DNA of 64,000 bases from IMGVR_UViG_3300046517_002304:186001-250000; one strand, 5' to 3'; numbered from the stretch's first letter, positions 8,939 to 58,019 are shown. The notes: a model not told the origin generated them from the letters alone. A program made the numbers and translations.

Positions 8939-9498
8939 GTAAATTTAAAGTTAATCTTCGTCAAGGTCGTGCAGGGCGCTTAGATACAAGCGCGGTAGCC
9001 GGAGTTAGTTTTCAAAGAACCGTTCACATTTCTGGACCAGATGGAGTTAATAAAGAGTATGTAGATGGACAAGTATTTGAAGAATCTAATTTTTACAAGT
9101 GTTATTGCCTTCCTGCCTGTAAACCAGAAGATGCTAAGCTACAAATATTAGAAGATGATGGTAGAGAATATGCCCCAAACAGCAAGCATCCTGTTATTTT
9201 TACTAAAGTAATTAATGCACACTCTAACTGTTTGCCAGAGTATACTATTGACGCCAAAAGAGATTGTCATGGAACTATCGTAGCGGCCCAAATCACTAAT
9301 CGTTGCGCAACTGGGTCTGGCGAAGACATAAACGTAAAATTTAACAAGAGCAACAGCGCCATTCTTGAGATTATGGCCGGAGAAACACAAACGTTTGGAA
9401 AAGATGATTTTAATATATCCAATATCGATTTTATTAATAATACTGATCATAACATTAAAATGCAGGTATTAATTTCTGTTGTCTCTGATTTTAAGTAA
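8935..9498 (+). CDS. Hypothetical protein
   Basis: 187-aa ORF translationally coupled to both neighbours. Confidence 0.6.
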   Translation: MSKFKVNLRQGRAGRLDTSAVAGVSFQRTVHISGPDGVNKEYVDGQVFEESNFYKCYCLPACKPEDAKLQILEDDGREYAPNSKHPVIFTKVINAHSNCLPEYTIDAKRDCHGTIVAAQITNRCATGSGEDINVKFNKSNSAILEIMAGETQTFGKDDFNISNIDFINNTDHNIKMQVLISVVSDFK

Positions 9499-11097: not shown

Positions 11098-11118
11098 GAA
11101 ATAAAATAGCGATAAAAA

Positions 11119-13041: not shown

Positions 13042-13042
13042 A

Positions 13043-17479: not shown

Positions 17480-17939
17480 GATTATACAAAGTAGCATTTC
17501 TTGGGATAGTTATTTTTTAAACATAGTTAATGACATCGGAAAGAAAAGCAAAGATCCTAGTACTAAAATCGGGTGCTTGATAGTTGATAAGGAAAACCGC
17601 ATTAAGGCAACCGGATACAATGGATTTCCGTCTAAGGTCATTGACTACGAAGAAAGATATACTGACAGAAATCAAAAATTATATTTTACAGAACATGCAG
17701 AAAAAAACGCTATTTTTTATGCTGCCCGCCTTGGAATTTCTGTGGTTGGCTGCAAGATATTCATACCCCTTCATCCTTGTCACGAGTGCTGCCGTGGGAT
17801 TATACAATCTGGTATAGATGAAGTGATTTTTACTAACGACAATTCTAATGGGTATTATGATAGGTGGCGAGAAAGTATCGCATACGCAGATATAATGTTT
17901 GAAGAAGCCGGTATTTTATTAAGAAAGATTGATGTATGA
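17472..17939 (+). CDS. dCMP deaminase
   Basis: KSKDPSTKIGC, TGYNGFP, HAEKNAI and PCHECCRGI zinc motifs. Likely start MNKIIQ at 17472, overlapping the NDT stop. Confidence 0.92.
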   Translation: MNKIIQSSISWDSYFLNIVNDIGKKSKDPSTKIGCLIVDKENRIKATGYNGFPSKVIDYEERYTDRNQKLYFTEHAEKNAIFYAARLGISVVGCKIFIPLHPCHECCRGIIQSGIDEVIFTNDNSNGYYDRWRESIAYADIMFEEAGILLRKIDV

Positions 17940-18910
17940 AGAACATTAGTTTAGATCTAATTAGAGTTTGTGAAGCAGCCGCTATAGAAGCAGGCAAGCT
18001 TGTTGGCAGTGGAGATAAACTAGAAATTGACCGAGTCGCCACAGACGCTATGCGCAAGAGGTTAAATGAAATACGGTTCGCCGCCAAGGTAGTGGTTAGT
18101 GAAGGAAAGAAGGACGGAGCAGCGCATCTAGAGGGCGAATATGTTGGCTTGCTAGGACGACAGTTCGCCGAAAATTCTTCTGCTGCTAGTGTATCCGAAT
18201 ATAAAAATATACAAGACAGTAAGCCTAATACTTATGAAATCGCACTGGATTCAGTTGATGGCACCACTCCCACATCAATTAATGGAGCTGAAGCAATGAG
18301 CGTCTTAGCAGTTGCTAATGAAGATTGCATGTATGTTCCTCAAAACTTCTACATGAATAAACTGGCTTATGGTGCAAAAATACGGTCAAAAGTAAGGTTG
18401 AATATCTTAGATCCTATTGAGAGAAATGTTGAGCTATCCGCTTTTGCATTAGATAAAAAAATTAATAATCTAATGGTTGGGTTGTTAAACCGCCAAAGGC
18501 ATAATGACATAATAACAAGATTAAGAAAGATGGGAGTTAGACTAAAGCTTCTACAAGATTGTGATGTGTCTGGATGTATAGGAACATGTTTGCCAGAAAG
18601 TGATATTGATTTATTTTTTGGATTCGGTGGAGCGCCTGAATCCATCATAGCAACCGCGGCGATTAAATCCCTCAGAGGAGGATTTCAATCATATGAAGTA
18701 GACAGTAATTTTAAGCAATCTGGTGATGTGATGGACGAGAATGCTTTAATTAGAGGAGATTGTGTTTTTGTAGCTACAGGTGTTCTTAACGGCTCAATGC
18801 TCCGTGGCGTAAGATTTACAGAAGATGGATGTATAACTAACTCGGTATTCATGAGAAGTAAATCCGGAACAATTCGTTGGCTAACGACGCACCATAATCA
18901 CGAAATCTAG
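17936..18910 (+). CDS. glpX: Class II fructose-1,6-bisphosphatase
   Basis: RVCEAAA, DAMRKRL, VVSEG, IALDSVDGT, GGAPE and FVATGV..G.ML.GVRF. Confidence 0.9.
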   Translation: MKNISLDLIRVCEAAAIEAGKLVGSGDKLEIDRVATDAMRKRLNEIRFAAKVVVSEGKKDGAAHLEGEYVGLLGRQFAENSSAASVSEYKNIQDSKPNTYEIALDSVDGTTPTSINGAEAMSVLAVANEDCMYVPQNFYMNKLAYGAKIRSKVRLNILDPIERNVELSAFALDKKINNLMVGLLNRQRHNDIITRLRKMGVRLKLLQDCDVSGCIGTCLPESDIDLFFGFGGAPESIIATAAIKSLRGGFQSYEVDSNFKQSGDVMDENALIRGDCVFVATGVLNGSMLRGVRFTEDGCITNSVFMRSKSGTIRWLTTHHNHEI

Positions 18911-40608: not shown

Positions 40609-41508
40609 TTGTCAAACCATCTAATTAGCACAAGTCAGTTTCATGAACCAAAAGATTTAGAGCCTTTTTTTGCTCACGCCGATTTAATGGCGAATCCATG
40701 GAAAAAGGCCGACCCCATTTATATGTTGCGTGGTAAGGTCGTAGGACTTGTTTTCTTAGAAAATAGTACAAGAACCAAGATATCTTTTAAGGTTGCAGCG
40801 AAACGGTTAGGATGTCATACATTTGATTTCGGAGTACAACAGTCGTCAATTCAAAAGGGCGAAAGCTTACAAGATACAATAAAGGTCTTGGAGCAATATT
40901 CTGACGCTCTTGTTATTAGAGAAAGAAATCATTCGCTACTTGAGACGTTTGCCAAAACATCAGAAATACCTATTATAAATGCCGGTAGCTCAGAACACCC
41001 TACTCAAGCAATAAATGATTTATATACAATTAAAAAAGAAATCGGCAAAATACATGGAACGAATATTTTACTTATGGGTGACTTGAAATATAACAGAGCC
41101 ATTTTTTCACTAATTAACATGCTAAAGATGTATTCGCATATTAGAATTCATCTTTATTCACCCGCTGAACTAAGGCTCCCCAAAGAATTTTTCTATGAAA
41201 ACATCATCTTTGTTGAGGAACAGGATCTTACAAAGTTACTTCCTAAAATAGATGTCGTCTACATCACGCGCCCGCAAAAAGAGCTATACCCAGAAGGGCT
41301 GTACGAAGAAGTTAAAAATAAATACGTTTTTGGTGAAAAAGAACTTGCTTTATTGGCAAAAGATGCTATTATCATGCATCCATTACCACGTAATAATGAA
41401 ATTCCCAGAACGCTGGACTCTGACAAGAGAGCCGTCTATTTTCGGCAAGTAAAAAATGGCATGTACATACGAATGGGAATTCTCAAAGAACTTATGAGGC
41501 ACGAATGA
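40609..41508 (+). CDS. pyrB: Aspartate carbamoyltransferase catalytic subunit
   Basis: FLENSTRTKISF, EHPTQ, GDLKYNR, TRPQKE, MHPLPR and QVKNG; GGAG upstream of the TTG start. Confidence 0.95.
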   Translation: MSNHLISTSQFHEPKDLEPFFAHADLMANPWKKADPIYMLRGKVVGLVFLENSTRTKISFKVAAKRLGCHTFDFGVQQSSIQKGESLQDTIKVLEQYSDALVIRERNHSLLETFAKTSEIPIINAGSSEHPTQAINDLYTIKKEIGKIHGTNILLMGDLKYNRAIFSLINMLKMYSHIRIHLYSPAELRLPKEFFYENIIFVEEQDLTKLLPKIDVVYITRPQKELYPEGLYEEVKNKYVFGEKELALLAKDAIIMHPLPRNNEIPRTLDSDKRAVYFRQVKNGMYIRMGILKELMRHE

Positions 41509-46017: not shown

Positions 46018-46550
46018 TACTTGTCCTTCCAAGGCATATCTTTAAATAACCCATATTCATCATCGTTGCCGCCCGTTGGCTCTTGTGGTGTTGATTTTTT
46101 TTGACTTTTATCCATAAATTGTTTAAATGAATAACCAGGAGGCAATTCATTTTTTGGTGGATAAGTGGCGATTACATTATCTCCATGCGCGCTAAAGCCA
46201 AACATTTGTTCGGTTCCGTGCTTAATTTTTTTGAGCACATTGAGCATATCTGATCTATTGATTGGCACTTCAATGAACAAATTGTCTCTAGCTATGTTTC
46301 CTCTAGACATTCTATCCATAAAATAATTAACAATATCCATTACGCCACTTTCTGCTCCGTCTATTTCAAAAATAAAGATGCCTCTTTTGTAGTTGGTCCT
46401 ATATAAGGCGAAAGCATTGACGTTTCCAGCGCCATCAAACGATACGACTCCAGTGTTAGTAGAAATTTTTTTCTCTAAAGCAGGCGTGTAGTTTCTAGAA
46501 ATATCAGCAATTTGGCTCAAGTTCCTGGGTGTAATATTTTGAATTGGCAT
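46017..46550 (-). CDS. Hypothetical protein
   Basis: 177 aa; TAAATA-N4-ATG; YSFKQFMD near the C-terminus. Confidence 0.6.
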   Translation of the reverse strand: MPIQNITPRNLSQIADISRNYTPALEKKISTNTGVVSFDGAGNVNAFALYRTNYKRGIFIFEIDGAESGVMDIVNYFMDRMSRGNIARDNLFIEVPINRSDMLNVLKKIKHGTEQMFGFSAHGDNVIATYPPKNELPPGYSFKQFMDKSQKKSTPQEPTGGNDDEYGLFKDMPWKDK

Positions 46551-46554
46551 GATA

Positions 46555-46560
46555 TATTTA
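46555..46560 (-). promoter_or_regulatory. Late-promoter-like TAAATA
   Basis: 4 nt before ATG 46550. Confidence 0.6.
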
Positions 46561-46561
46561 G

Positions 46562-46589
46562 TTGCATTTTTTTGTTTTTATGATATAAT
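46562..46589 (+). promoter_or_regulatory. Sigma70-type promoter for rtcB
   Basis: TTGCAT-N16-TATAAT with an extended TGn; GGAG at 46598-46601; ATG at 46609. Confidence 0.65.
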
Positions 46590-46608
46590 GCACGGTTGGA
46601 GAAAAATC

Positions 46609-47985
46609 ATGAATCCTAGACAACTAGAAAAAATCGGCATTACCCCGGACTGTATGTCTACTGCTATTGCTGGAATACAGAAGGCGGCAAAAGATGGCGT
46701 TCTTAGAACAATGAACGTTAAGGCCAAAATAAAGGGAATAGCAGATAACCCAGAATCTGGCGTGAATGATCTATATTTCGGGGATTTGGCTAAGGAAATT
46801 ATAAAAGATAAGAGTTTTGTCGCCAAAGAACCTGTTCCTTATTCTTATTGGGGAGTGGTGGACGAAAATGTAAAGGGTCAAATGCAAAACGTTTGCTCTG
46901 TTCCTAATGTGGAAAAAGTATCTTTAATGGCAGATAGTCATTATTGCACGCCGATACCCGTAGGAGCAGTCGTCGCTATGTCGGACGCCATTTCTCCATC
47001 TCTAGTAGGATCTGACATTTCATGTATGATGAAAATGTCTATCCTTGACATGCCCGTTTTGTCTATTAAAACCAAGCTTAATCTTTATAAAGAAGCGATT
47101 AATACCAGCACTAGGTTCGGAATGGGGCCTGAAGCATTGCACGATAAGCCGCAGCATCACCCTATAATGGACCAGCACTGGAGCATCACTAGAGTAACTA
47201 GAGAGATTAAAGATAGGGCATGGAAGCAATTAGGTAGTTCTGGTAACGGGAATCATTTTTGTGATATAGGAATAGTTACGCTAAATTCTAATGCATTTGG
47301 ATTAACTGCCGGCGAATATGTGGCTATTCTGTCTCACAGCGGTTCCAGAGGCCCTGGTGCGGCTGTATGCGATACTTATGACAGTATCGCTGGCAGAAAG
47401 CGACCTAGACGATATGATTACCTTGGGCGGCTGTCCTGGCTGGATAAAGGCACCCAAGAGTTTTATGAATACTGGGAAGCAATGAACTTCATGGGAGAAT
47501 ATGCATCTGCTAATCATGAAGTTATACATAGGTTGCTAGTAAAAAACATAGGAGCAAATGTCTTGTTCTCATTAGAAAATAAACATAATTTTGCTTGGCT
47601 AGAGGAAGTGGACGGCAAGGAAATGTACGTTCACAGAAAAGGAGCAACTCCCGCCGGAAATGGAGTTATGGGAATTATCCCTGGTTCTATGGCTTCGCCA
47701 GCGTTTGTGGTTTGCGGAAAGGGTAATAAAGAATCAATTAACTCTGCGTCTCATGGCGCAGGACGAGTAATGAGCCGTAGACAAGCTAATGAGAAGTTTA
47801 ATTGGAAATCTATTAAAGGTGATTTAGACAAAAAAGGTATAACCGTAATTGGTGCATCTGCCGAAGAAGCACCTTATGTGTATAAGGACATTGAGCAAGT
47901 TATGAAACAACAGGAAGACCTGGTAGATGTAGTGGCTCGTTTTGATCCAAAAATTGTTCGTATGGCAGAAGATGAAAGAAGATGA
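46609..47985 (+). CDS. rtcB: RtcB family RNA 3'-phosphate/2',3'-cyclic phosphate ligase
   Basis: MADSH, GSDISC, GNGNHF, SHSGSRG, HNFA, HRKGAT, IIPGSM, SHGAGR and EEAP..YKDI. Likely start MNPRQLE at 46609. Confidence 0.95.
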   Translation: MNPRQLEKIGITPDCMSTAIAGIQKAAKDGVLRTMNVKAKIKGIADNPESGVNDLYFGDLAKEIIKDKSFVAKEPVPYSYWGVVDENVKGQMQNVCSVPNVEKVSLMADSHYCTPIPVGAVVAMSDAISPSLVGSDISCMMKMSILDMPVLSIKTKLNLYKEAINTSTRFGMGPEALHDKPQHHPIMDQHWSITRVTREIKDRAWKQLGSSGNGNHFCDIGIVTLNSNAFGLTAGEYVAILSHSGSRGPGAAVCDTYDSIAGRKRPRRYDYLGRLSWLDKGTQEFYEYWEAMNFMGEYASANHEVIHRLLVKNIGANVLFSLENKHNFAWLEEVDGKEMYVHRKGATPAGNGVMGIIPGSMASPAFVVCGKGNKESINSASHGAGRVMSRRQANEKFNWKSIKGDLDKKGITVIGASAEEAPYVYKDIEQVMKQQEDLVDVVARFDPKIVRMAEDERR

Positions 47986-48483: not shown

Positions 48484-49404
48484 TTGATGGCAAAAAATCT
48501 CAAACGATGTTTGTTTTTCATAATTCTATTTGCCATACTCTTCTCATCGCTCCCGCAAGACAAATATAAAAACGGTGCCGTTGTCTTAATAGGCGGCGGA
48601 TATTGTGCAGAGGGCATTGAGTGGCTGTTAAATAAGGCCGAAAGTAGAGAGATGCTCGTGCTATCGTCAGATGACGTATGGATGAGCTGGCTATACAGAC
48701 TTCAGGCCAATACTAAGATAGACTTCTTAATAATACCATCTAGGGATGCCGCTAACTCAGATCAAGTAATTGATAAAATCTATAGAGCTAAATCCATTCT
48801 GATATCCGGAGGCTATCAGAACGATTACATTAAGTTATGGAAAGGAACCAAGCTTGCGGCAGCAATAAGCAAAATGGCTTATAAAATTCCCGTTGGTGGG
48901 TCAAGTGCCGGACTAGCTATTATGGGTGAATTTTACTATTCAGCAAAAAACAATACGGTGATTAGCGATGAAGCGCTATTCAACCCGTATAATGAGTTTA
49001 TGTCTGATATTGATAATAACTTTCTTAAATTACCATTTATGGAAAATATAATTACTGACTCTCATTACGCAGAAAGAGGGCGACAAGGCAGACACTTGGT
49101 CTTCATGGCGAGAATATTAAATGATAGGCATATAGAAAATATTAAAGGAATCGGAATAGATGAAGACACGGCTTTATGCATTGACTACCGGGGAACCACA
49201 ACCGTTTTAGGGAATGGCAAGTGTTATCTTATAGAAAATCTATCTTTCCCGAAGATATGCATTATAGGACAATGCCTAATCTGGAACAGAGCAGCAAGGG
49301 CGTACATCATTAGTTCTGGCACCGTATTTGATATTAATAAATGGAAATTTGAGAGCAGCGAAGTTTGGAGTGTTGAAGACGGGAAACTAGTCCGCGCTAA
49401 TTAG
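48484..49404 (+). CDS. Cyanophycinase-like S51 serine peptidase with signal peptide
   Basis: VLIGGG, ISGGYQ, GGSSAG (Ser), TDSHY (His) and GIGIDEDTA (Glu); hydrophobic N-terminus. Confidence 0.85.
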   Translation: MMAKNLKRCLFFIILFAILFSSLPQDKYKNGAVVLIGGGYCAEGIEWLLNKAESREMLVLSSDDVWMSWLYRLQANTKIDFLIIPSRDAANSDQVIDKIYRAKSILISGGYQNDYIKLWKGTKLAAAISKMAYKIPVGGSSAGLAIMGEFYYSAKNNTVISDEALFNPYNEFMSDIDNNFLKLPFMENIITDSHYAERGRQGRHLVFMARILNDRHIENIKGIGIDEDTALCIDYRGTTTVLGNGKCYLIENLSFPKICIIGQCLIWNRAARAYIISSGTVFDINKWKFESSEVWSVEDGKLVRAN

Positions 49405-49840
49405 CGTATCTTTTAATTAATGAAATAGAATGATTAATTAAAGCGCTAAGCCCGAAGTGCTTCGGTTGTATTTTCAGAAGCTCATTTAAATCTACCCACT
49501 TAAACTCCTGCGTTTCACAGTTGCTGGTCGGCTGAAATTCTTCGGGTACTAAACCGATGAAATTATGATACTCAAAATCCTTATCTTTAAACACATAAGC
49601 GGGAATTAGGTTTATCATTCCACGATAACCAGTTTCTTCATGAAACTCTCTATTGGCTTCTGCTTTTAGGCTTATCGTATTATCGTCTACCTTACCGCCG
49701 ATAGTTCCATAGGTATTTGGCTCATTCACATGAATAGAGCGCAATGCTATTAGAATTCTCTTCGTAGTAAAAGAAATGGGCAATATCCCAACTCCCTTGC
49801 TTCCCCAATATCGGGATTCTAAATAGTTTTTGAATTTCAT
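49397..49840 (-). CDS. Nudix hydrolase with FKNYLE N-terminal motif
   Basis: GG....REFHEETGY Nudix box. Start MKFKNYLE at 49840 (TAATG-coupled). Confidence 0.85.
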   Translation of the reverse strand: MKFKNYLESRYWGSKGVGILPISFTTKRILIALRSIHVNEPNTYGTIGGKVDDNTISLKAEANREFHEETGYRGMINLIPAYVFKDKDFEYHNFIGLVPEEFQPTSNCETQEFKWVDLNELLKIQPKHFGLSALINHSISLIKRYAN

Positions 49841-50076
49841 TAGCTTAAATGCTTGTAGGCTCGCCATATAACACAAACCCCAATACCACCGGCTACCGAA
49901 AAGAAGATGCTTTCATGACAACCGAATAAAGACGCAACTAAGTGGCCTAGTACTGATCCAAATACCCCCACTGCTGTAGTTGCCCAGAAACCTTCTGGCT
50001 CTTCGCCAGGATGAATTAGTTTAGCAATCTGACCGATTGTGAATCCCATTAAAACAACATAAATAATATGAAACAT
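49840..50076 (-). CDS. GlsB/YeaQ/YmgE family membrane protein
   Basis: GFTIGQIAKLIHPG..G...T..VGV.GS.LG..SVAGG; GGAGG upstream. Confidence 0.8.
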   Translation of the reverse strand: MFHIIYVVLMGFTIGQIAKLIHPGEEPEGFWATTAVGVFGSVLGHLVASLFGCHESIFFSVAGGIGVCVIWRAYKHLS

Positions 50077-50097: not shown

Positions 50098-50982
50098 TTA
50101 GGATACATTAACCGGTTTATTATTGACAACCACTTTAGGCAAGGCGTCTAGTATGGCTTCTATAAGTTTAACCTGCCCATCGTCAACCTTTTCTAGGTAT
50201 ATGAATAAATCTGCTAAGTTTCTAGCATCTGGATGGTATGAGTATCTATTGGCCAGAAGGTGCTGTATGGCTTTTAGCATTTCATCTTCGGAATCGCCCA
50301 GTACATGCTTTGTGAGAGCAAAGTAATCTCTTTTAAATTGGGCTACTCTTACGCCAAATTCATGCGGCATTAAATAATATTTAACAGTATTTTTTTCATC
50401 TCTGTCAAGGTCTGAATTATCAATATCGGCATCAGTAAATTGTCTAATAAGTCGCTCTTTAAAAGTATTTTGGGCAGCGTGCGTTAGCTCGTGTGCCAGT
50501 GCTTCTTCTTCATCTTTTTTAGCAACTACGCAGAAAGGATTGCCGATTGCGTCGTTGGAGCAAAAGGCTACATTGCCCGTTAACTTACCCTTTAGCTCAT
50601 CTGGACTTACGTTTATAACTGGAACGTACTGCATCATTCTAATCTGGTTAAACACCATGCCGCTTTTGGCATCTGCGGGTTTTTGAGCCTTAACTGCATT
50701 GCTTATTGCACTATCAGTTTTATCACCATAAAAACCATGTATTACATCTAGTGGTTTATAAAAAGCAATTTGATCTGGGTTTAAATTATACCCATATGTT
50801 TTTTTAACATATTGAATTAAGTCGGCCTTTCTCTCAACTTCTGTTGCCTTATCAGGATGAATCCGAGATACCTTTGGCATTATACCCATCATGGCTGTGC
50901 CGATTACTAATGGACTTGCTATTTTACGAAGCCTGCTGTTCATAAGACCCTCAGTTTGAATTAGCCATTCTCTAAATCGCAT
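50098..50982 (-). CDS. Zincin-like (HExxH) metallopeptidase-domain protein with FREWL motif
   Basis: ALAHELTHAAQ (50479-50493) and downstream PHEF; N-terminus MRFREWLIQTE. Confidence 0.65.
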   Translation of the reverse strand: MRFREWLIQTEGLMNSRLRKIASPLVIGTAMMGIMPKVSRIHPDKATEVERKADLIQYVKKTYGYNLNPDQIAFYKPLDVIHGFYGDKTDSAISNAVKAQKPADAKSGMVFNQIRMMQYVPVINVSPDELKGKLTGNVAFCSNDAIGNPFCVVAKKDEEEALAHELTHAAQNTFKERLIRQFTDADIDNSDLDRDEKNTVKYYLMPHEFGVRVAQFKRDYFALTKHVLGDSEDEMLKAIQHLLANRYSYHPDARNLADLFIYLEKVDDGQVKLIEAILDALPKVVVNNKPVNVS

Positions 50983-50986
50983 GAAT

Positions 50987-50992
50987 TATTTA
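50987..50992 (-). promoter_or_regulatory. Late-promoter-like TAAATA
   Basis: 4 nt before ATG 50982. Confidence 0.6.
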
Positions 50993-52410
50993 TGGAAATG
51001 GCATCCTATAATAGATTCACGATGTTAAAACTAGAAAAGATAAAGAAAGCATTAGACTTAGTTAGGGTAAATCCAGAAAAGGCAGAGCCAATGCTGGTAG
51101 ATTTATATAAACAGTATTCGTCTGATAGACAACTAGGCCGAATGCTTGGTATGTGTAAAATTCAGCTAAAAAAGTTTAAAGATGCAGAACCTATATTCGT
51201 CAACTTAGTGCAAAAAGAGCGAAGATATGATGATTACTTTATTATGGCAGGCATCTATACGAATCTAGGGAAACATGACGAATCTATAAGCATTTTATAT
51301 AAGTTATTAAATCAAAAACCAGATGATATCAAAGTACAAAACCATATTGCTAGTAAGCTTTGGAATATTGGCAAGTACGAGGATTCTATTAAATTACTAA
51401 AAAATTCTAGTCATAGCTATAAAACATGCGATGATTGGGACAATCTAGCTAATTTTGCGATTAATTTTCTAGACTTACAAACAGCAGAACTGGCAACAAA
51501 AGAATCTCTAAAAATTAATCCAGATAATCCTGCGGCTCACCTTAATCTTATCGATTTATACGATTTTCGTGGTGATTGGAAGTCTGCAATTAAAGAAAAA
51601 GAATGGCGAGTGAAGCAGTTTGACGATTACAAAGTGTATTTTAACAAGTATCCAGCAGACAAGCTGTGGGCCGGGCAATCTCTTGATAATAAAACAATTA
51701 TAATTTATGGTGAACAGGGTTTCGGCGATGTCATTCAACACTATAGATTTGCATCTTATCTTGAGAACACTAAGGTAATATTTAACTGCCCCAATAAGCT
51801 TAAAACCCTTTTATACAACCAAGAAAGTAATTTTGAAATCATCGCGTCTAATATGTCAGATCCAGAACCATCTCCTGAGCATGACTATCATATTTTGTCA
51901 GACAGCCTACCGTATGTGATGAAAGTAACATCCATATGCGGTAGGCCGTATCTTAAATCTCAAAAATCAGATTTAAAAAGCAATAAATTTAAGGTGGGGT
52001 TTGTGTGGGCTGGAAACAGTCAGTATAAAATGGATAAAGAGCGTTCTATTCCGCAAGACTTTTTCCGCTTTAACAACGATAAGATTCAACTTTATAGCTT
52101 ACAAGTGCCATCACAAGATGGAGATTTTTATATTAACTTGGCAGATAAAATTAATGATTTTTCTGACACCGCTCAATTTTTGATGGGATTAGATTTATTC
52201 ATTTCATGCGATACTGCAACGGCGCATTTGGCTGGCGCATTAGGTGTTTCTACATGGCTATGCTTACCATATTCTCCGGACTCAAGATGGGGGCTGGGAG
52301 AAACTTCGCATTGGTATGATTCTATTCGAATATTCCGACAAGAAAGTGTCGGGAACTGGCATTCTGTATTTAATAATATCAAGAACGCTCTTTTAACAAC
52401 CATCCCTTAA
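50992..52410 (+). CDS. TPR-repeat plus GT9-like glycosyltransferase
   Basis: N-terminal TPR helices; EQGFGDVIQ, GFVWAGN, DLFISCDTATAHLAGALG and WYDSIRIFRQ. Confidence 0.9.
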   Translation: MEMASYNRFTMLKLEKIKKALDLVRVNPEKAEPMLVDLYKQYSSDRQLGRMLGMCKIQLKKFKDAEPIFVNLVQKERRYDDYFIMAGIYTNLGKHDESISILYKLLNQKPDDIKVQNHIASKLWNIGKYEDSIKLLKNSSHSYKTCDDWDNLANFAINFLDLQTAELATKESLKINPDNPAAHLNLIDLYDFRGDWKSAIKEKEWRVKQFDDYKVYFNKYPADKLWAGQSLDNKTIIIYGEQGFGDVIQHYRFASYLENTKVIFNCPNKLKTLLYNQESNFEIIASNMSDPEPSPEHDYHILSDSLPYVMKVTSICGRPYLKSQKSDLKSNKFKVGFVWAGNSQYKMDKERSIPQDFFRFNNDKIQLYSLQVPSQDGDFYINLADKINDFSDTAQFLMGLDLFISCDTATAHLAGALGVSTWLCLPYSPDSRWGLGETSHWYDSIRIFRQESVGNWHSVFNNIKNALLTTIP

Positions 52411-53107
52411 AACTAACACTATCGCCGAACTGAAAAGATTTTTGCTGATAGTAAGGGTGTAGCTTTTGCGTTTCTATGTCCTTAACTTGTTGGTTGGCAA
52501 CATTACCGTATTGAGTAGACGGTGATTGTGATGGCTTTCCGCCGTTTTCTAATTCTGGAAGAGTAAAAGTATAATTTTTTTTTGTGGAGTAAACATAAAC
52601 ATAGAACTCTTCGTTCTCATCAAATTCTTCGCTCCCACCCTCTTGTTCAATAATTTCCCCTAATCCATCGGCTATTTCTTTTATGTCTTTCGGCATGAGA
52701 GTCCATGTTTCCACATGATCGTTTCTAACCGCTTTCCATCCGTATTGCTTTATGACATATTCTCTAGAATCTCCGCGACCCTCAGCAATGGCGAACATAT
52801 CTGCCGGAATTTTATGCTTGGCTAATGATTTGTCGATAAGTTTTTTTCGTCTTTGATTATCATTAAGTATTTTCAGAGCGCTAATTTCATACTGATTTAA
52901 TTCGCCTTCTTCGTCATCAATAATCTTCTCTACAAATTCGTCCCAGTCCACATACTCATTATTAATGAACTCATCAAGTCCATATGCGCCAATTACTTGG
53001 CGCATAACGAAATCTGTGGCTATAAAATCATGATTCTTATCGCCTGTGTCGCCATCTGCGAAATCTACTTCGCCTCCGATAATCCAGTATTCTCCAGTTA
53101 TTGCCAT
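52379..53107 (-). CDS. Acidic hypothetical protein with C-terminal FKGWL motif
   Basis: 242 aa; TATATA-N4-ATG (53112-53117). Confidence 0.6.
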   Translation of the reverse strand: MAITGEYWIIGGEVDFADGDTGDKNHDFIATDFVMRQVIGAYGLDEFINNEYVDWDEFVEKIIDDEEGELNQYEISALKILNDNQRRKKLIDKSLAKHKIPADMFAIAEGRGDSREYVIKQYGWKAVRNDHVETWTLMPKDIKEIADGLGEIIEQEGGSEEFDENEEFYVYVYSTKKNYTFTLPELENGGKPSQSPSTQYGNVANQQVKDIETQKLHPYYQQKSFQFGDSVSFKGWLLKERS

Positions 53108-53123
53108 ACTTTATATAGGAAAT

Positions 53124-54845
53124 TTATATTACTTTGCGGGTATACATCCATTCATATATCCTCTCAAAACACCAAGGCGCTTCTGGGAAGTTAATAGATA
53201 AATCAAGCCATTTTTGATATTGTTCTTTGGTATATTGCCTAATTGTATCTCTTCCTATAGCCATTATGGCCCCAGCCCCAAAGCACAACGTATCTGGTAA
53301 TTTATCGTCTGGAAACATGGTAGAAAGCAGCTCTTGTATTTTCAGACCATCATGGTTCGGCCTACCGTTTAAGTAACAGTCCAAGTTTACGTCGCACAAA
53401 TTAATAAAAGAAATATTGCGAGGTATCTTTATTATATTGCTCATAAATTTACGACAATGGGCCATTGTGTTGCCTTGACAAAAAATCGTAACATCAGACA
53501 AGTTATCGTAGTTTTCTATAATATGATGAAAGTAAGTATGGGCCTCTCTGCCGATATTAGGCAAAGCAATAGCAGGCGTTAGCTTACTTTCTGATTTATC
53601 ATACACTTTTTTCTTGCAGTTTAAATCGTGAAGCCAATCAATATCTTCTTTATATTTTGCCACCACAATTTCAATACCATCTAAGCTTTCATTAACTACA
53701 TAATATTCTTTAAAATCTGTAAATTGCTCATATTTTTTTTCCATGCTAGTTTTATTTTCGCTAGGATAAGTTCCTGTGGTATGGTAGCATATAAGAGAAA
53801 ATTTATCCTTGATAATAGCAGTATTACTAAACGTATTTGGAAGCCTGGCCCATCTTATCGGATATTTTGCTGACACCTTAAATAACTCTGATATATAATA
53901 CTGGTCATCATGTTCGGGATTTTGCTCCACGCGATCCAAAACATCGGCATAAAGCTTCTCTGTAATTTCGGAGCATCTCACCACCGCCAACCCTCCGTTT
54001 ACACAGTAATAATCACAGTGATCCGTTTCTTTCATAAAAAGAACGTCTTTATTTATCATAAGTTTTTGCACAATATCATAAAACGGACGAATCCATAAGA
54101 TATCGGAATCTGAAAATATTACTATTTTACCGTAATTATTTTTGATTAAATTTAAAGCTATCTTGGTTCTTTTGATTATAGTAGACATGTACCCATAACT
54201 ATTCCAATTTGCGTTTCCCGGTACCTCAACTGATATCGCCCCAACTCTAATGTTTGGATCGTTGGTAATCTTTAAAGAATTTAAAAATACAGAATGCTCC
54301 ATATCCTTATAATTTCCTGCGCCCACCGTGTATATGTTAATCGGCTCATTATACGGGATTAGCTTTTGGTGGTTTTTTGCAATATCTACCTTAACTGGAT
54401 TTTTTTCGTTTATCCATTCTGTAAAACATCTAGTATCTGATGTATCTAATAAACTAGATGATACCATAGTGCCGCTGAAGCCTCCGCCAGAACCCAAGCG
54501 AATTATTTCATGCTTAGAACACTCAAAAGACATTTTGGCTAGCATGTCCCGGCTGTTTAATAGGAAATCTTCGTCGATAAAACAGATATATTTTGAATAC
54601 AGCAAGTTACAGCATAGGTTCATAACGGAATTGATGCTGTTTATTTCAGCAAAATGAATCTCTACATCCGGAGATTTAAAATCATAAATGTACTTGATAT
54701 AATCAACATTTGAACCATTGTAAACTATTGCGATATACGGATTGTCGGATTGTAACCTTAACTCATTAACAATGCTGTCAATTTTTTTCTCATTTTGTAT
54801 GATTAAACATACGGTTATCGGATAATCCCAAGGATAAATTTTCAT
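53124..54845 (-). CDS. Multi-domain glycosyltransferase: GT-A-like + nucleotide-diphospho-sugar transferase + DUF3431-like
   Basis: IFSDSDILW (DxD), VNGG and DDQYY; C-terminal IVVAKYKEDIDW..NIGREAHTY..YDNL.DVTIFCQG. Confidence 0.75.
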   Translation of the reverse strand: MKIYPWDYPITVCLIIQNEKKIDSIVNELRLQSDNPYIAIVYNGSNVDYIKYIYDFKSPDVEIHFAEINSINSVMNLCCNLLYSKYICFIDEDFLLNSRDMLAKMSFECSKHEIIRLGSGGGFSGTMVSSSLLDTSDTRCFTEWINEKNPVKVDIAKNHQKLIPYNEPINIYTVGAGNYKDMEHSVFLNSLKITNDPNIRVGAISVEVPGNANWNSYGYMSTIIKRTKIALNLIKNNYGKIVIFSDSDILWIRPFYDIVQKLMINKDVLFMKETDHCDYYCVNGGLAVVRCSEITEKLYADVLDRVEQNPEHDDQYYISELFKVSAKYPIRWARLPNTFSNTAIIKDKFSLICYHTTGTYPSENKTSMEKKYEQFTDFKEYYVVNESLDGIEIVVAKYKEDIDWLHDLNCKKKVYDKSESKLTPAIALPNIGREAHTYFHHIIENYDNLSDVTIFCQGNTMAHCRKFMSNIIKIPRNISFINLCDVNLDCYLNGRPNHDGLKIQELLSTMFPDDKLPDTLCFGAGAIMAIGRDTIRQYTKEQYQKWLDLSINFPEAPWCFERIYEWMYTRKVI

Positions 54846-56221
54846 CTTTTTTTAATTTTTTGAAATTGTTCTAATTTTAACTCAACACTACTTTTATTTT
54901 TTACTGGGAATGTCCCTATTGAATGATAACAGATCAATCTATCGTCATTGATATCATACTCTAGCGAGCTATTGGCGAATACGCTTGGCAACATGCACCA
55001 TTTAAGATTGGACTTTGGCAGCAAAGTATTAACAATGCCCTGGAACCTTAAGTTTTTTTCCTTCAGCGAACAATATACTTTTTCGTAAAAATCATATATG
55101 TCCTTATAAAACTTTTCAGTTTTTTCCGAACACTTAATAACCGATATTCCTATATTGGCCTTATCCTCTGCCTCTTCGTTATTTGATTCTTTGGTGTACA
55201 GACAATCATAATTTTGCATCATTAAAAATTTAATCGTATGCGAAAACGGCTTGAACCAATAGATGTCCGCGTCAGAGAAGACTATGACTTTGCCATAATT
55301 TGATTTGATCAAGTTAATGATAATTTGCGTTTTATACAAATCCATGTCGGCAAATCCTTGGCTGGTAAAGTCACCATTACTATAATGATCTATAAATAAA
55401 GGCTTTAGCTCTATATCTGGATCATTAATTTCGTTCAATGACTTCATGTAAACATTATGATACAATTTCTCATGGGATTGAGAATACATGCAGAACATTT
55501 GTATTTTGCTATTATGATCCCACTGAGGCGATGTTGTATCGGCATAAGATAACATTAAATCAGAATCATGTTGCATCTTATCTTTATCGTCGTAAAACCC
55601 AAATACTTTGTCGCTCTTACTATAGCCTTCTTCTCCCAGTATAAATGGGCTAATTTTATTGTCTTTTAAATTCAAATTAAACATAACTTCCCTACTCAAG
55701 TAATCCTTAGATGCTCCAGTAGGCGCTTGATTCCGCAACCCTAATCTTTTACTTAGTTTTCTAAGATTAAAACTAATATTGTGCTTGGCGAATAAGTCTT
55801 TTTTTACCATAAGGCTTTTAAATCCCACCATTGACTTATGTCCTGGATAAGTTTTGTCAATTAAACTATATCCACATACGTTTTTTTTGCTGCATAATGA
55901 CATCATATATTCAAGAGAGCATGTCGCTTTTGGTAGACAGGTCATGTCTGTTATGTAAACATAATCTGATTTGCTTATACTAATAGCAAATTCTAATGCA
56001 CAAACAAATGCGTCAGATTGATTGATCTGATAGTTTGGCGATATCCATTGGACAATGATATTCTTGCTTTTAATTTCTTTTAAGTAATAAAAGTCCCCTA
56101 GCTTTTCTCCAGTATATAAGATAATAATATCAGGACGAATCGTTTGTAGTTCTAGCAAATTGACCAAATTAGCCACGCTTTGTCTTTGACTGGTGATAAT
56201 GCAGGCACTAATATTTGACAT
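54842..56221 (-). CDS. Glycosyltransferase: GT2-like N-terminus + nucleotide-diphospho-sugar transferase
   Basis: VFSDADIYW (DxD), ANIG and FQGIVN; C-terminal domain paralogous to the neighbouring gene. Confidence 0.72.
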   Translation of the reverse strand: MSNISACIITSQRQSVANLVNLLELQTIRPDIIILYTGEKLGDFYYLKEIKSKNIIVQWISPNYQINQSDAFVCALEFAISISKSDYVYITDMTCLPKATCSLEYMMSLCSKKNVCGYSLIDKTYPGHKSMVGFKSLMVKKDLFAKHNISFNLRKLSKRLGLRNQAPTGASKDYLSREVMFNLNLKDNKISPFILGEEGYSKSDKVFGFYDDKDKMQHDSDLMLSYADTTSPQWDHNSKIQMFCMYSQSHEKLYHNVYMKSLNEINDPDIELKPLFIDHYSNGDFTSQGFADMDLYKTQIIINLIKSNYGKVIVFSDADIYWFKPFSHTIKFLMMQNYDCLYTKESNNEEAEDKANIGISVIKCSEKTEKFYKDIYDFYEKVYCSLKEKNLRFQGIVNTLLPKSNLKWCMLPSVFANSSLEYDINDDRLICYHSIGTFPVKNKSSVELKLEQFQKIKKR

Positions 56222-56230
56222 ATATTTAAA

Positions 56231-56983
56231 TTAGTTATTGTTATGATAATATAAGCTAAAATTACCGTCATTATCTTCAATGATAGCAGAACAACTTTCA
56301 ACAAAATCGCCACAATTCATGTATTTAAACCCATTGATGTCTTTGATTTCAGCATGATGAATATGTCCGCATATAACTCCATCACATCCATTTTTAATGC
56401 CGTATGAGACAAGACAATCCTCAAAATCAGACATATAATTAACTGCGCTTTTTACATTATACTTGACCGCCTTGCTTAAAGACCACTTTTTAAATCTAAA
56501 TATCTGCCTTATTTTATTCACCAGGTGATTTAGCCTAAGTAAAAACTCATACCCTATGTCACCTAAAACACACAGCCACTTAGCGTGTTTTGTAACTAAA
56601 TCAAATGCATCGCCATGAATAACCATCATTTTTTTGCCGGCAGCGCTTTCGTGTATGACTTCGTTAGTAATTGTTATATTTCCAAAACTTAAAATATGAT
56701 ATTGATCGATAAATTTTCTAATAAACTCATCGTGGTTTCCAGCGATTAAATAAACCTTAGTGCCTCGTTTTATGAAGCCAAAAATCTTTCTAATAAGAAG
56801 CGTAGCGTTATCGTCCCAATACCAATTTCTTTTTAATTTCCATCCGTCAATAAAATCGCCAACGATATAGATAAATTCTGGCTCGTCCTTTTTGACGGAT
56901 GTTAAAAAATCAATTAGCTCTTTTGTGTGAGCATGCCTAGATCCAAGATGTATATCGCTAATAAATAGGCTACGTATTTTCAT
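56231..56983 (-). CDS. LpxH-like (UDP-2,3-diacylglucosamine hydrolase family) metallophosphoesterase
   Basis: SDIHLG, VGDFIDGW, GNHDE, HGDAFD, CGHIH and NCGDFVE. Confidence 0.88.
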   Translation of the reverse strand: MKIRSLFISDIHLGSRHAHTKELIDFLTSVKKDEPEFIYIVGDFIDGWKLKRNWYWDDNATLLIRKIFGFIKRGTKVYLIAGNHDEFIRKFIDQYHILSFGNITITNEVIHESAAGKKMMVIHGDAFDLVTKHAKWLCVLGDIGYEFLLRLNHLVNKIRQIFRFKKWSLSKAVKYNVKSAVNYMSDFEDCLVSYGIKNGCDGVICGHIHHAEIKDINGFKYMNCGDFVESCSAIIEDNDGNFSLYYHNNN

Positions 56984-58019
56984 TTACTATATTTATGACC
57001 TTTTGAACTCCATTTACCATTTTACTTTCTGATGGCTTAAAATTATTGACGAAATTAATAACCACTTTTTCATTTAACTTACTGGCGCTGCAACTTTGTC
57101 CAATCTTTAATTTGTCAACATAGAATGCATTTATATGCTGTTCATACTGGCCTGGTTCTGGAACAACCAGCATTGGTTTGTTGTAGAATCTAGCCTCTGT
57201 TATCAACTGATTACCTGCTGTAGATATTACACATTGACAATTTGCCAAGTCTTTGATAAAGAACGGAGACAAGCCATGAAAACTAAAGTTTTCTTTATCA
57301 AAGAAGTAGTTTTTGTTTTTGTTATCTATATGCCCATAAACATGGAGCGGTATATTTAGATTTCTAAGAGAATCAAGTATTATATCGCTTACGGTTCCAC
57401 GAAGATACACTAGGACAAAGCCTTTATTACTAGGGGTAATTTGGTCCATTCCCTTCCTTAGTAGACCGTATGTAAGCGAAACATTTGGATTGTTTGGAGT
57501 TAAGTTATCAAAGTTGAAAGTAGAAATAATAGTTTTATATGGATTGGGCACCATATACTCTACGGTAAGTTTCGCCATTCGGCAATATAGCTTTAAAAAG
57601 GCAGGAAGATCTGATAAATCGCAATCAAGAAAGCGATGCTGATTATCAACGGATATAAATTTTTTATTTAACAGATTGGCAACTCTCGGCATAGATGGCT
57701 CAAAATCCGTCATGAATAGGCATGGGTTTAATTCATCTGCTTTGGTCTTTATGTAATCTAAGTTCTTTTTAATCTCATGTTTAAAGAAATTATAAGTAGT
57801 TAATCCAGTCTTTAGATAATTAACGTGATTATGTCTGTAAGAAAACAAAATGCCGGCAATGTTATGTCTATTCTGGTATTTTATAGTTTTTAAAAATTCG
57901 TAAGCTTTGCCAAATGTAAAAATATGAAATTCATATTCTGGCATGTGCTCTACAACAGAGAGAGTTCTTGTGATATGACCTAGACCTTCGCCAGCAACAC
58001 CATAGAAGATTCTTTTCAT
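56970..58019 (-). CDS. MJ1255/VC2487-like GT-B glycosyltransferase
   Basis: IFYGVAGEGLGHITR, TDFEP, VDNQH, ISTAGNQLITEA and GQYEQHINA. Confidence 0.85.
   Translation of the reverse strand: MKRIFYGVAGEGLGHITRTLSVVEHMPEYEFHIFTFGKAYEFLKTIKYQNRHNIAGILFSYRHNHVNYLKTGLTTYNFFKHEIKKNLDYIKTKADELNPCLFMTDFEPSMPRVANLLNKKFISVDNQHRFLDCDLSDLPAFLKLYCRMAKLTVEYMVPNPYKTIISTFNFDNLTPNNPNVSLTYGLLRKGMDQITPSNKGFVLVYLRGTVSDIILDSLRNLNIPLHVYGHIDNKNKNYFFDKENFSFHGLSPFFIKDLANCQCVISTAGNQLITEARFYNKPMLVVPEPGQYEQHINAFYVDKLKIGQSCSASKLNEKVVINFVNNFKPSESKMVNGVQKVINIVNENT

What the first reader, a model, noticed from the sequence alone, without database searches (positions are those of the whole stretch)
50992..58019. Seven-kilobase glycosylation island
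Seen: a TPR-GT9, two multi-domain DxD transferases (one with a DUF3431-like domain), an LpxH-like phosphoesterase and an MJ1255-type GT-B. With the GT9, DUF115-like and GT2-like genes elsewhere, this makes about eight glycan-related genes, and no nucleotide-sugar synthesis genes are in the window. The minus-strand block has late-type elements (58024, 56223). Inference: late glycosylation of virion proteins or of the host envelope using host sugars; the TPRs suggest a protein substrate.
Basis: partly seen in the sequence, partly recalled or inferred. Interest (0 to 1): 0.6.

Follow-up and report, generated by a model that had tools for sequence, protein, structure and literature searches.

The report
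Phage lipid-renovation and glycosyltransferase gene cluster

Summary
In detail: all five named genes are at the stated coordinates, plus one unnamed ORF. The window lies in a 511,233-bp tailed phage with terminal repeats, found in soil and rhizosphere metagenomes.

The single-function reading is only partly supported.

- **'LpxH-like' gene (56231-56983):** it scores far below the LpxH cut-offs. It is 43-45% identical to alphaproteobacterial genes sitting in plcP-agt operons, and 54-57% identical to Planctomycetota genes.
- **'MJ1255' GT-B (56970-58019):** it lies immediately upstream of this gene in 7 other phage-like contigs and in many Planctomycetota genomes. Five such genomes tested use LpxI for lipid A.
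- **Best reading of the pair:** phospholipase C PlcP plus a diacylglycerol glycosyltransferase, converting phospholipid to glycolipid. At least 512 IMG/VR contigs carry PlcP relatives, often beside GT4 or GT21 transferases and PstS. GenBank phages annotate them as LpxH.
- **Two multi-domain transferases (53124-56221):** they are paralogues with GT-A folds, and DUF3431 also models as GT-A-like. They are tightly packed with the pair only in this phage, so their acceptor is unknown.
- **TPR-GT9-like gene:** it is a separate, convergent unit.
- **'Late elements':** not supported.

This is a new variant of a known pathway. No enzyme activity or expression was tested.

The parts
56970..58019 (-). 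P0006, 349 aa. Soluble GT-B glycosyltransferase of Pfam PF13528 (related to MJ1255/VC2487). Probable UDP-sugar:diacylglycerol glycosyltransferase and first gene of the minus-strand block.
   Evidence: PF13528 E 5e-55 and Glyco_tran_28_C E 6e-6. N-terminal Gly-rich loop GEGLGH. The family profile hits GT1 UDP-glycosyltransferases and MurG in the PDB. It sits directly upstream of a PlcP homologue in L017, L019, L020, L191-L194 and in Planctomycetota genomes. pI 9.1, no TM helix.
56231..56983 (-). P0005, 250 aa. Metallophosphoesterase of the PlcP clade (phospholipase C of lipid remodelling). Its start overlaps the end of P0006 by 14 nt.
   Evidence: Metallophos E 8e-14. All metal-binding motifs are invariant: D10, H12, D43, N83-H84, H123, H207, H209. 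54-57% identical to Planctomycetota and phage orthologues. 43-45% identical over its full length to Rhizobiales genes followed by a GT4 gene of about 350 aa, the plcP-agt layout. PDB LpxH reaches only E 1e-5. LpxH equivalog cut-offs are not met. Tree clade 100/99 with Pirellulaceae and Planctomycetaceae.
54842..56221 (-). P0004, 459 aa. Two-domain transferase: an N-terminal GT2-like domain without DxD, then a GT-A domain (PF03407) with a DAD motif. Starts 9 nt after P0005.
   Evidence: PF03407 E 3e-7. Paralogue of P0003 (26% over 456 aa, E 6e-39). Its N-domain is related to the GT2-like gene at genome 464114-464965. Motifs.
53124..54845 (-). P0003, 573 aa. Three-domain transferase: N-terminal GT2-like domain (DED), GT-A domain at 164-386 (PF03407, DSD), and a DUF3431 domain at 390-570. 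Overlaps P0004 by 4 nt.
   Evidence: PF03407 and PF11913. AF2 model: residues 164-386 match PBCV-1 A64R at Z 16.5 (rmsd 3.1, 191 aligned), and also LH3, UGGT and GT8. The DUF3431 domain modelled alone has pLDDT 96.9. Every top-50 match is a GT-A or nucleotidyl-transferase fold; best is the WbbM N-domain at Z 9.2, 173 of 189 aligned. The same fusion occurs in P0236 and P0237.
52379..53107 (-). P0002, 242 aa. Acidic protein (pI 4.6) of unknown family and last gene of the minus-strand block.
   Evidence: No match in Pfam, PHROGs or NCBIfam. The Atlas gave no usable hit. It starts 16 nt after P0003, and its 3' end overlaps the 3' end of P0001 by 32 nt.
50992..52410 (+). P0001, 472 aa. TPR domain (about 1-205) plus a GT9-like GT-B C-terminal domain. 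A separate transcription unit, convergent with the block.
   Evidence: TPR_19 E 1e-11. GT9 at 15.7 bits, sub-threshold. About 2,575 homologues named 'TPR-containing glycosyltransferase family protein', many with PF01075. Two paralogues in the genome, 77810-79255(-) and 136174-138231(+).

Best explanation
The region is a composite of three units, not one glycosylation island.

**(1) The PlcP pair, 56231-58019(-).** These two translationally coupled genes form a lipid-renovation module. P0005 is a PlcP-type metallophosphoesterase. It would cleave the phospho-head group from host glycerophospholipids, leaving diacylglycerol. P0006 is a basic, soluble, MurG/GT1-like GT-B. It would then transfer a sugar from a host UDP-sugar onto diacylglycerol, giving a phosphorus-free glycolipid. 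During infection this would keep the membrane intact while releasing phosphorus-bearing head groups for use by the phage. That matters for a phage that must replicate 511 kb of DNA in phosphorus-poor soil.

**(2) The GT-A genes, 52379-56221(-).** P0004 and P0003 follow with gaps of 9 nt and -4 nt, then the unknown P0002. Together they supply two GT-A domains with DxD, one DUF3431 GT-A-like domain and two poorly modelled GT2-like N-domains. They probably add further sugars, either to the new glycolipid head group or to another cytoplasmic acceptor.

**(3) The TPR gene, 50992-52410(+).** P0001 is an independent TPR-GT9-like enzyme. Its TPR domain suggests a protein acceptor.

**Shown:** family assignments, conservation of the pair, folds, motifs and absence of TM segments.
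**Inferred:** enzyme activities, acceptors, the phosphorus-sparing purpose and co-transcription.
For: **Assignment of P0005 to PlcP rather than LpxH**
- It is 43-45% identical over residues 2-244 to Rhizobiales proteins. In Brucella cytisi and Pelagibacterium the next gene is a 343-353-aa GT4. That is the published plcP-agt operon (PMC4796936, PMC9239053, PMC8231724).
- LpxH structures match only at E 1e-5. NCBIfam LpxH cut-offs are missed by a wide margin.
- All metal ligands are invariant.

**Conservation of the pair**
- GT followed by PlcP, in the same order and adjacent, occurs in 7 other phage-like contigs: L017 (410 kb), L019, L020 and L191-L194.
- The same pair occurs in Pirellulaceae, Planctomycetaceae, Kuenenia and Bacteriovoracaceae genomes.
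- In one bacterial contig the pair lies beside DUF3419 fragments, a family linked to the betaine-lipid synthase BTA1 (PMC10685587). In another it lies beside a cyclopropane-fatty-acid-synthase-like gene.

**Independence from lipid A**
- In five Planctomycetota genomes with the pair, the only LpxH-model hit is the pair's own gene (44-51 bits).
- All five encode LpxI (164-182 bits), so the pair is not their lipid A step.

**Phage precedent**
- At least 512 IMG/VR contigs encode PlcP relatives.
- Among the 79 of the best 80 loci in which my PlcP profile found the gene, 35 have a GT2/GT21-type gene, 29 a GT4 gene and 10 a PstS-like gene within the fetched flanks. Ribonucleotide reductase and T4-type terminase genes are also present.
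- In Pelagibacter phage Mosig the homologue sits beside a phosphate ABC transporter gene.

**Other support**
- The P0006 family profile hits UDP-glycosyltransferases with lipophilic acceptors and MurG.
- None of the island proteins has a TM helix, and P0006 and P0005 are basic.
- Soil and rhizosphere origin.
Against: - No activity, lipid or expression data exist, and no RNA run holds the region.
- P0006 is not the characterised Agt (GT4) and not a recognised MGDG-synthase family. No member of PF13528 next to PlcP has, to my knowledge, been assayed.
- The link between the pair and P0004/P0003 rests only on tight spacing in this one phage. These genes are absent from the flanks of the pair in the other 7 phage-like contigs.
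- The nearest fusion homologues of P0003 sit with sulfotransferase and GT2 genes, not with PlcP.
- The phosphorus-sparing purpose is an analogy with bacteria.
- No phosphatase that would release phosphate from the head groups was identified in the window.
- The host is unknown.
Confidence: 0.55

Rival explanations
1. The whole cluster is one late-expressed unit that glycosylates virion proteins, or host surface glycans such as LPS, using host sugar nucleotides.
For: - There are four transferase genes, and the genome is rich in such genes: 6 GT9-like and 6 GT2-like hits.
- The best fold match of the P0003 GT-A domain is PBCV-1 A64R, a capsid-glycan enzyme. Mimivirus R699 and R655 also match.
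- P0001 has the TPR plus GT-B architecture of FlmG, a protein O-glycosyltransferase (PMC7591256).
- A GT9-like gene and an MptE/DUF115-like gene lie next to PKD-domain genes at 9.5-16.3 kb.
Against: - The esterase and GT-B pair is explained better by the PlcP module.
- The cluster is not conserved as a unit.
- Its neighbours are metabolic genes (RtcB, peptidase S51, NUDIX), not structural ones.
- There is no late-promoter evidence.
- A fold match to A64R shows a shared GT-A fold only, not a shared function.
Confidence: 0.2
2. The pair remodels the membrane as proposed, but its purpose is not phosphorus economy. Instead it changes envelope properties, for example to exclude superinfecting phages, stabilise a long infection, or prepare lysis.
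For: - The enzymatic evidence is the same as for the best explanation.
- The pair is kept in large phages from varied samples.
- The extra GT-A genes would give an unusual head group, more than phosphorus sparing needs.
Against: In smaller phages PlcP homologues sit next to PstS-like phosphate-binding genes, which points to phosphorus stress. Nothing here speaks directly to exclusion.
Confidence: 0.15
3. P0005 is a true LpxH (UDP-2,3-diacylglucosamine diphosphatase) and P0006 an LpxB-like partner, so the pair boosts or alters lipid A synthesis.
For: - LpxH is the best-scoring NCBIfam and PDB family.
- GenBank phages annotate the homologues this way.
Against: - Scores are far below the equivalog cut-offs.
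- Identity to proteins in plcP-agt context is much higher.
- Planctomycetota genomes with the pair all carry LpxI.
- P0006 is PF13528, and no LpxB-type family appeared among its matches in the Pfam scan.
Confidence: 0.05
4. The transferases glycosylate hypermodified bases in the phage DNA.
For: Large phages often modify their DNA, and all island proteins are soluble and cytoplasmic.
Against: - The genome has no ThyA-type hydroxymethylase homologue.
- No island gene matches a known DNA glucosyltransferase family.
- Only a DNA methylase was seen in the window.
Confidence: 0.05

Closest known systems
Bacterial PlcP-Agt lipid-remodelling pathway (Sinorhizobium, Phaeobacter MED193, SAR11 HTCC7211, Pseudomonas aeruginosa, Methylosinus OB3b)
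   Same: An LpxH-like metallophosphoesterase is paired in an operon with a GT-B glycosyltransferase. P0005 is 43-45% identical to alphaproteobacterial genes in plcP-agt context.
   Different: - The gene order is GT then PlcP, not PlcP then Agt.
- The transferase is PF13528 (MurG/GT1-like, probably inverting), not GT4.
- The pair is carried by a phage.
- Here it is followed by two multi-domain GT-A genes.
- Pho regulation is unknown.
Planctomycetota PF13528-GT / PlcP gene pair (uncharacterised)
   Same: Same two families, same order, adjacent or overlapping. 54-57% (PlcP) and 42-50% (GT) identity. They share a clade with 100/99 support.
   Different: The bacterial copies are chromosomal and lack the downstream GT-A genes.
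PlcP-like AMGs of smaller environmental phages (e.g. Pelagibacter phage Mosig EXVC030M, annotated as LpxH)
   Same: A phage-borne PlcP homologue at 42% identity. In IMG/VR contigs it is often next to a glycolipid-type transferase and PstS.
   Different: Those phages pair it with GT4 or GT2/GT21 genes, or with none. None of the 79 loci analysed has the PF13528 GT.
LpxH (UDP-2,3-diacylglucosamine diphosphatase)
   Same: Same fold, and the match runs along the whole length.
   Different: Equivalog cut-offs are not met. Genomes with the pair use LpxI.
Chlorovirus PBCV-1 A64R and WbbM-type multi-domain glycosyltransferases
   Same: Several GT-A domains sit on one chain. The P0003 middle domain matches A64R at Z 16.5. 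The DUF3431 domain matches the WbbM N-terminal domain at Z 9.2.
   Different: Sequence identity is only 11-14%. The domain order and the third domain differ. The acceptor is unknown.
FlmG (Caulobacter flagellin O-glycosyltransferase)
   Same: P0001 has the same architecture: an N-terminal TPR domain plus a C-terminal GT-B domain (PMC7591256).
   Different: Homology was not tested. The phage has no CMP-sugar synthetase.

Membership tests
PlcP (metallophosphoesterase phospholipase C of lipid remodelling) | Calcineurin-like metallophosphoesterase with intact metal-binding motifs | tested here: met
   PF00149 at 52.9 bits against a cut-off of 21.5. D10, H12, D43, N83/H84, H123, H207 and H209 are invariant across six orthologues.
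PlcP (metallophosphoesterase phospholipase C of lipid remodelling) | Closer to proteins of plcP operons than to LpxH | tested here: met
   43-45% identity at E about 1e-72 to Rhizobiales genes followed by a GT4 gene. PDB LpxH reaches E 1e-5 and 28 bits. No experimentally characterised PlcP sequence was in hand, so the link runs through synteny.
PlcP (metallophosphoesterase phospholipase C of lipid remodelling) | Adjacent gene for synthesis of a phosphorus-free lipid | tested here: met
   A GT-B gene lies directly upstream, with a 14-nt overlap. The same pairing occurs in 7 other phage-like contigs and in many Planctomycetota genomes.
PlcP (metallophosphoesterase phospholipase C of lipid remodelling) | Phospholipase C activity on PE, PG or PC that yields diacylglycerol | not testable with these tools
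   Needs an enzyme assay or lipidomics.
LpxH (NCBIfam NF003743 / TIGR01854 equivalogs) | Score above the curated equivalog cut-off | tested here: not met
   52.6 against 134 bits, and 49.2 against 190.35 bits.
Agt (GT4 glycolipid glycosyltransferase) | GT4 domains (PF00534 / PF13439) | tested here: not met
   P0006 matches PF13528 and PF04101 only. The genome has no PF00534 hit.
Glyco_trans_1_3 (PF13528) / MJ1255-VC2487 (TIGR00661) | Score above the family cut-off | tested here: met
   PF13528 at 187.2 bits against a cut-off of 25. TIGR00661 at 157 bits is below its subfamily cut-off of 195.9. P0006 is therefore a member of the Pfam family, not of the narrower subfamily.
Glycosyltransferase family 9 (PF01075), for P0001 | Score above the gathering cut-off | tested here: inconclusive
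   15.7 and 15.4 bits against a cut-off of 22. Two paralogues pass (32.9 and 23.5 bits). Many homologues carry PF01075.
Nucleotid_trans (PF03407), GT-A with DxD, for P0003 and P0004 | Family score, GT-A fold and DxD motif | tested here: met
   37.2 and 31 bits against a cut-off of 22. GT-A fold at Z 16.5 to 2p6w. DSD and DAD motifs are aligned.
DUF3431 (PF11913) | Family score | tested here: met
   70.2 bits against a cut-off of 25. 3,662 relatives exist, mostly stand-alone proteins of 180-200 aa. The fold is GT-A-like at moderate Z.
Maf / DUF115 (PF01973), for window 10267-11097 | Score above the gathering cut-off | tested here: not met
   23.2-24.3 bits against a cut-off of 34.6.
FlmG-type protein O-glycosyltransferase, for P0001 | TPR N-domain plus GT-B C-domain, and sequence homology to FlmG | not tested
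   The architecture matches (PMC7591256). No FlmG sequence was available from a tool.

The most novel reading that the evidence does not exclude
The five tightly packed minus-strand genes (58019 to 52379) form one phage-encoded pathway. It strips head groups from host phospholipids and rebuilds the diacylglycerol into a complex oligoglycosyl glycolipid, using up to five or six transferase domains. One of these is DUF3431, here acting as a previously unrecognised GT-A-type transferase. The result would be a virus-specified membrane lipid.
Probability: 0.2. Interest if true: 0.8.

Novelty: new variant of a known kind. Interest (0 to 1): 0.55.

Why it matters
**For phage biology.** If the pair works as proposed, large soil phages, and hundreds of smaller environmental phages with related genes, reprogramme host membrane lipids. 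Membrane renovation would then join PstS and PhoH among phosphorus-related auxiliary genes.

**For annotation.** It would correct a recurrent label, since these genes are filed as LpxH in deposited phage genomes.

**For bacteria.** It points to an unassayed glycolipid transferase family (PF13528) partnered with PlcP in Planctomycetota.

**For DUF3431.** It gives a first structural lead: a GT-A-like fold, fused to a GT-A transferase.

**For the host question.** The PlcP clade offers a lead that this 511-kb phage infects Planctomycetota.

Tried and rejected
- **Megablast against GenBank phages:** the island found nothing.
- **P0003 and P0006 as single queries against IMG/VR:** these returned only a fragment of the same phage (L002), or nothing.
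- **DUF3431:** literature gave only passing mentions in Aspergillus papers. A profile against PDB sequences gave noise such as myoglobin. Foldseek on the domain model found nothing below 1e-3.
- **P0003 N-terminal domain (1-163):** it modelled poorly (pLDDT 22-64), so its GT2-like nature rests on a weak Pfam hit (E 0.04) and on one paralogue.
- **P0002 and the 704-aa upstream neighbour:** no family in any library and no usable Atlas hit.
- **Promoter and terminator scan:** at or below shuffle expectation.
- **k-mer search for a 'late' motif:** no island-specific element.
- **Reads:** only DNA contigs were available, at least 99% identical, with one SNP. No expression data and no selection test were possible.
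- **Literature on phage-borne PlcP:** three searches found nothing. The last search, on phage Mosig, was uninformative.
- **DNA glycosylation:** considered and set aside because the genome has no ThyA-like gene.

Full report
**Setting.** The window is bases 186001-250000 of a 511,233-bp virus record with direct terminal repeats, rated complete. The genome has 39% GC. Tail and baseplate genes (Tail_P2_I, Phage_base_V) and PKD-domain genes show it is a tailed phage. All three stop codons end long ORFs, so I kept code 11. The island DNA occurs in six soil and rhizosphere metagenome runs from six studies. Two of these may be the source sample. No RNA run holds it. Contigs from four of the runs cover the island at 99% identity or more, with a single SNP. 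The sequence is therefore reproducible, but there is no variation to test selection and no expression data.

**Check of the observation.**
- **P0001, 50992-52410(+).** It has TPRs over about residues 1-205. Its C-terminal match to GT9 is sub-threshold (15.7 bits against 22). The architecture is still real. About 2,575 homologues exist, many carrying PF01075 and some named 'TPR-containing glycosyltransferase family protein'. The genome also holds two paralogues that pass the GT9 cut-off.
- **P0003, 53124-54845(-), and P0004, 54842-56221(-).** They are paralogues (E 6e-39) with PF03407 domains. P0003 also carries DUF3431. Their aligned DxD motifs are DSD and DAD.
- **P0005, 56231-56983(-).** It is a metallophosphoesterase whose best NCBIfam and PDB relatives are LpxH, but far below the equivalog cut-offs.
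- **P0006, 56970-58019(-).** It is a PF13528 GT-B. It falls below the TIGR00661 subfamily cut-off.
- **P0002, 52379-53107(-).** It has no family.
- **Elsewhere in the window.** The GT9-like gene at 9498-10274 is confirmed. The DUF115-like gene is below cut-off. No PF00535 hit falls inside the window.
- **Sugar-nucleotide synthesis.** The genome has no NTP_transferase and no CMP-sugar synthetase. Its single epimerase is outside the window. Dependence on host sugar nucleotides is therefore consistent with these searches.
- **'Late elements'.** These are not supported. Sigma-70-type sites and terminators are at or below shuffle expectation. The TAAATA-like string before the starts of P0004 and P0005 occurs in front of 86 genes of mixed function.

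**The key finding: a conserved GT-PlcP pair.** Homologues of P0006 (42-50% identity) are numerous. In every context I opened with more than 40% identity, the next gene downstream is a Metallophos gene. This holds for the phage-like contigs L017 (410 kb), L019 and L020, and for the bacterial contigs L018 (Planctomycetaceae) and L021. The six PlcP-like proteins are 54-57% identical to P0005, and all metallophosphoesterase motifs are invariant.

A scan of species-representative genomes found 439 relatives among the first 600 pattern hits.
- The best are Pirellulaceae and Planctomycetaceae, at 55-57% identity.
- Many Rhizobiales follow at 43-45% over the full length.
- In Planctomycetota, Kuenenia and a Bacteriovoracaceae MAG, the P0006-type GT lies directly upstream.
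- In Verrucomicrobiota and Gemmatimonadaceae, a more distant PF13528 gene lies directly downstream.
- In Brucella cytisi and Pelagibacterium, the next gene is a GT4 of 343-353 aa. In Sulfurimonas it is a patatin-like phospholipase.

PlcP followed by a GT4 'Agt' of about 334 aa is the published operon for phosphate-limitation lipid remodelling. PlcP makes diacylglycerol from phospholipids, and Agt makes glucosyl- and glucuronosyl-diacylglycerol (PMC4796936, PMC8231724, PMC9239053). Those papers describe PlcP as a manganese-dependent metallophosphoesterase, use LpxH as its outgroup, and note other transferase types next to plcP.

Two bacterial contexts add lipid flavour. DUF3419 fragments lie next to the pair in L021, and that family is linked to the betaine-lipid synthase BTA1 (PMC10685587). 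A cyclopropane-fatty-acid-synthase-like methyltransferase follows the pair in L018.

**Testing the lipid A rival.** Five Planctomycetota genomes that carry the pair were searched with the LpxH model. The only hit in each is the pair's own gene, at 44-51 bits against a cut-off of 190. All five have a strong LpxI (164-182 bits), as does the Caulobacter control. The pair is therefore not their lipid A diphosphatase step.

**Phages.**
- A maximum-likelihood tree puts P0005, L017, L019 and L020 in one clade with Pirellulaceae and Planctomycetaceae (support 100/99). The Rhizobiales plcP-agt genes fall in the other half.
- Only four IMG/VR contigs carry the P0006-type GT (17-320 kb). All four have PlcP immediately downstream and share other genes with this phage.
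- L017 and L019 also share sigma-factor and PhoH-region genes with it.
- The pair is thus a stable module in a group of large phages: eight contigs including this one.
- P0003 and P0004 are absent from the flanks of the pair in the other seven.
- At least 512 IMG/VR contigs encode PlcP relatives at 47-52% identity.
- My PlcP profile found the gene in 79 of the best 80 loci. None of these has the PF13528 GT nearby.
- Within the fetched flanks of those 79 loci, 35 have a GT2/GT21-type gene, 29 a GT4 gene and 10 a PstS-like binding protein. Ribonucleotide reductase and T4-type terminase genes are also present.
- Among deposited phages, Pelagibacter phage Mosig has a 42% homologue annotated as 'putative UDP-2,3-diacylglucosamine hydrolase', next to a phosphate ABC transporter gene. 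Synechococcus phage S-SRM01 has one at 33%.
- Three literature searches found no paper linking PlcP to phage genes. Absence from this library is not proof of novelty.

**The transferases.**
- **P0006.** Its family profile matches the nucleotide-sugar half of GT1 UDP-glycosyltransferases (YjiC type) and MurG. These enzymes have lipophilic or lipid-linked acceptors. That fits a diacylglycerol acceptor but does not prove one.
- **P0003 middle domain.** The AF2 model of P0003 (pLDDT 74) gives a confident GT-A domain at 164-386. Its best matches are PBCV-1 A64R (Z 16.5, rmsd 3.1, 191 aligned), the LH3 glucosyltransferase domain, UGGT and GT8 enzymes.
- **DUF3431.** This domain has 3,662 relatives, mostly stand-alone proteins of 180-200 aa. 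Modelled alone it reaches pLDDT 96.9. All 50 top structural matches are GT-A or nucleotidyl-transferase folds. The best is the N-terminal domain of the bifunctional WbbM (Z 9.2, 173 of 189 aligned). Z values of 7-9 are moderate, so I call it GT-A-like with moderate confidence.
- **The fusion.** PF03407 fused to DUF3431 recurs in P0236 and P0237, next to sulfotransferase and GT2 genes.
- **N-terminal domains.** Those of P0003 and P0004 are weakly GT2-like, and only P0003 keeps an acidic DED motif.
- **Location.** No island protein has a TM helix, and P0006 and P0005 are basic. All would act on the cytoplasmic side.

**Mechanism proposed.**
- *Shown:* families, folds, motifs, and conservation of the pair.
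- *Inferred:*
  1. P0005 cleaves host phospholipids to diacylglycerol plus a phospho-head group.
  2. P0006 glycosylates the diacylglycerol with a host UDP-sugar.
  3. P0004 and P0003 follow with spacers of 9 nt and -4 nt. They either extend that head group or serve another cytoplasmic acceptor, such as virion proteins or a lipid-linked glycan.
- P0001 is transcribed convergently and has two paralogues elsewhere, so it is a separate enzyme. Its TPR domain makes a protein acceptor plausible by analogy with FlmG (PMC7591256). Homology to FlmG was not tested.
- The phosphorus-economy purpose is an inference. It draws on the bacterial pathway, the PstS neighbours in other phages, the soil habitat and the large genome.

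**Verdict.** The single-function 'virion or envelope glycosylation island' reading is only partly right. The best-supported core is a phage-borne, Planctomycetota-type variant of the PlcP lipid-renovation pathway. The acceptor of the remaining transferases is open.

Noticed in passing
whole genome G000 (none in front of window genes): The 9-mer TAGTTATCC occurs 133 times on the minus strand and 14 times on the plus strand. Its 7-mer core AGTTATC lies within 60 nt upstream of 55 predicted genes, about 6-fold enriched. It is probably a phage-specific promoter or regulatory motif for another part of the genome.
   Followed up: partly
window 7283-8293 (-): A 336-aa protein matches Pfam Volactin, an actin homologue family, at E 2.9e-57 over its full length.
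   Followed up: no
window 17936-18910 (+), 40609-41508 (+), 46549-47985 (+), 48484-49404 (+), 49397-49876 (-): Metabolic and repair genes: glpX-type fructose-1,6-bisphosphatase, aspartate/ornithine carbamoyltransferase, RtcB RNA ligase, peptidase S51 and a NUDIX hydrolase. The bisphosphatase could feed hexose phosphates towards UDP-sugars, but that is speculation.
   Followed up: no
window 9498-16251: A GT9-like gene (9498-10274) and a weak MptE/DUF115-like gene (10267-11097) sit next to three PKD-domain proteins (11119-13041, 13043-15286, 15283-16251). This is a better candidate for virion-protein glycosylation than the island itself.
   Followed up: partly
IMG/VR loci L109-L188; GenBank MT647606.1 94129-94866; MW015081.1 210536-211240: At least 512 viral contigs carry PlcP relatives, often beside GT4 or GT2/GT21 transferases and PstS-like genes. 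Deposited phage genomes (Pelagibacter phage Mosig, Synechococcus phage S-SRM01) annotate them as LpxH.
   Followed up: partly
genome 77810-79255 (-) and 136174-138231 (+): Two further TPR plus GT9-like paralogues of P0001. Genome-wide there are 6 GT9-like and 6 GT2-like hits but only one epimerase (13312-13914, next to a GT9-like hit).
   Followed up: partly
L017 4467-4709 and L019 3035-3283: The related large-phage contigs encode an eIF-1a/IF1-like protein next to an NAD-dependent DNA ligase. A SIMPL-domain gene and a sigma-70-like gene lie near the GT-PlcP pair.
   Followed up: no
window 50982/50992: The divergent genes 50098-50982(-) and 50992-52410(+) start only 9 nt apart, so any promoters must lie inside the neighbouring coding sequence.
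   Followed up: no
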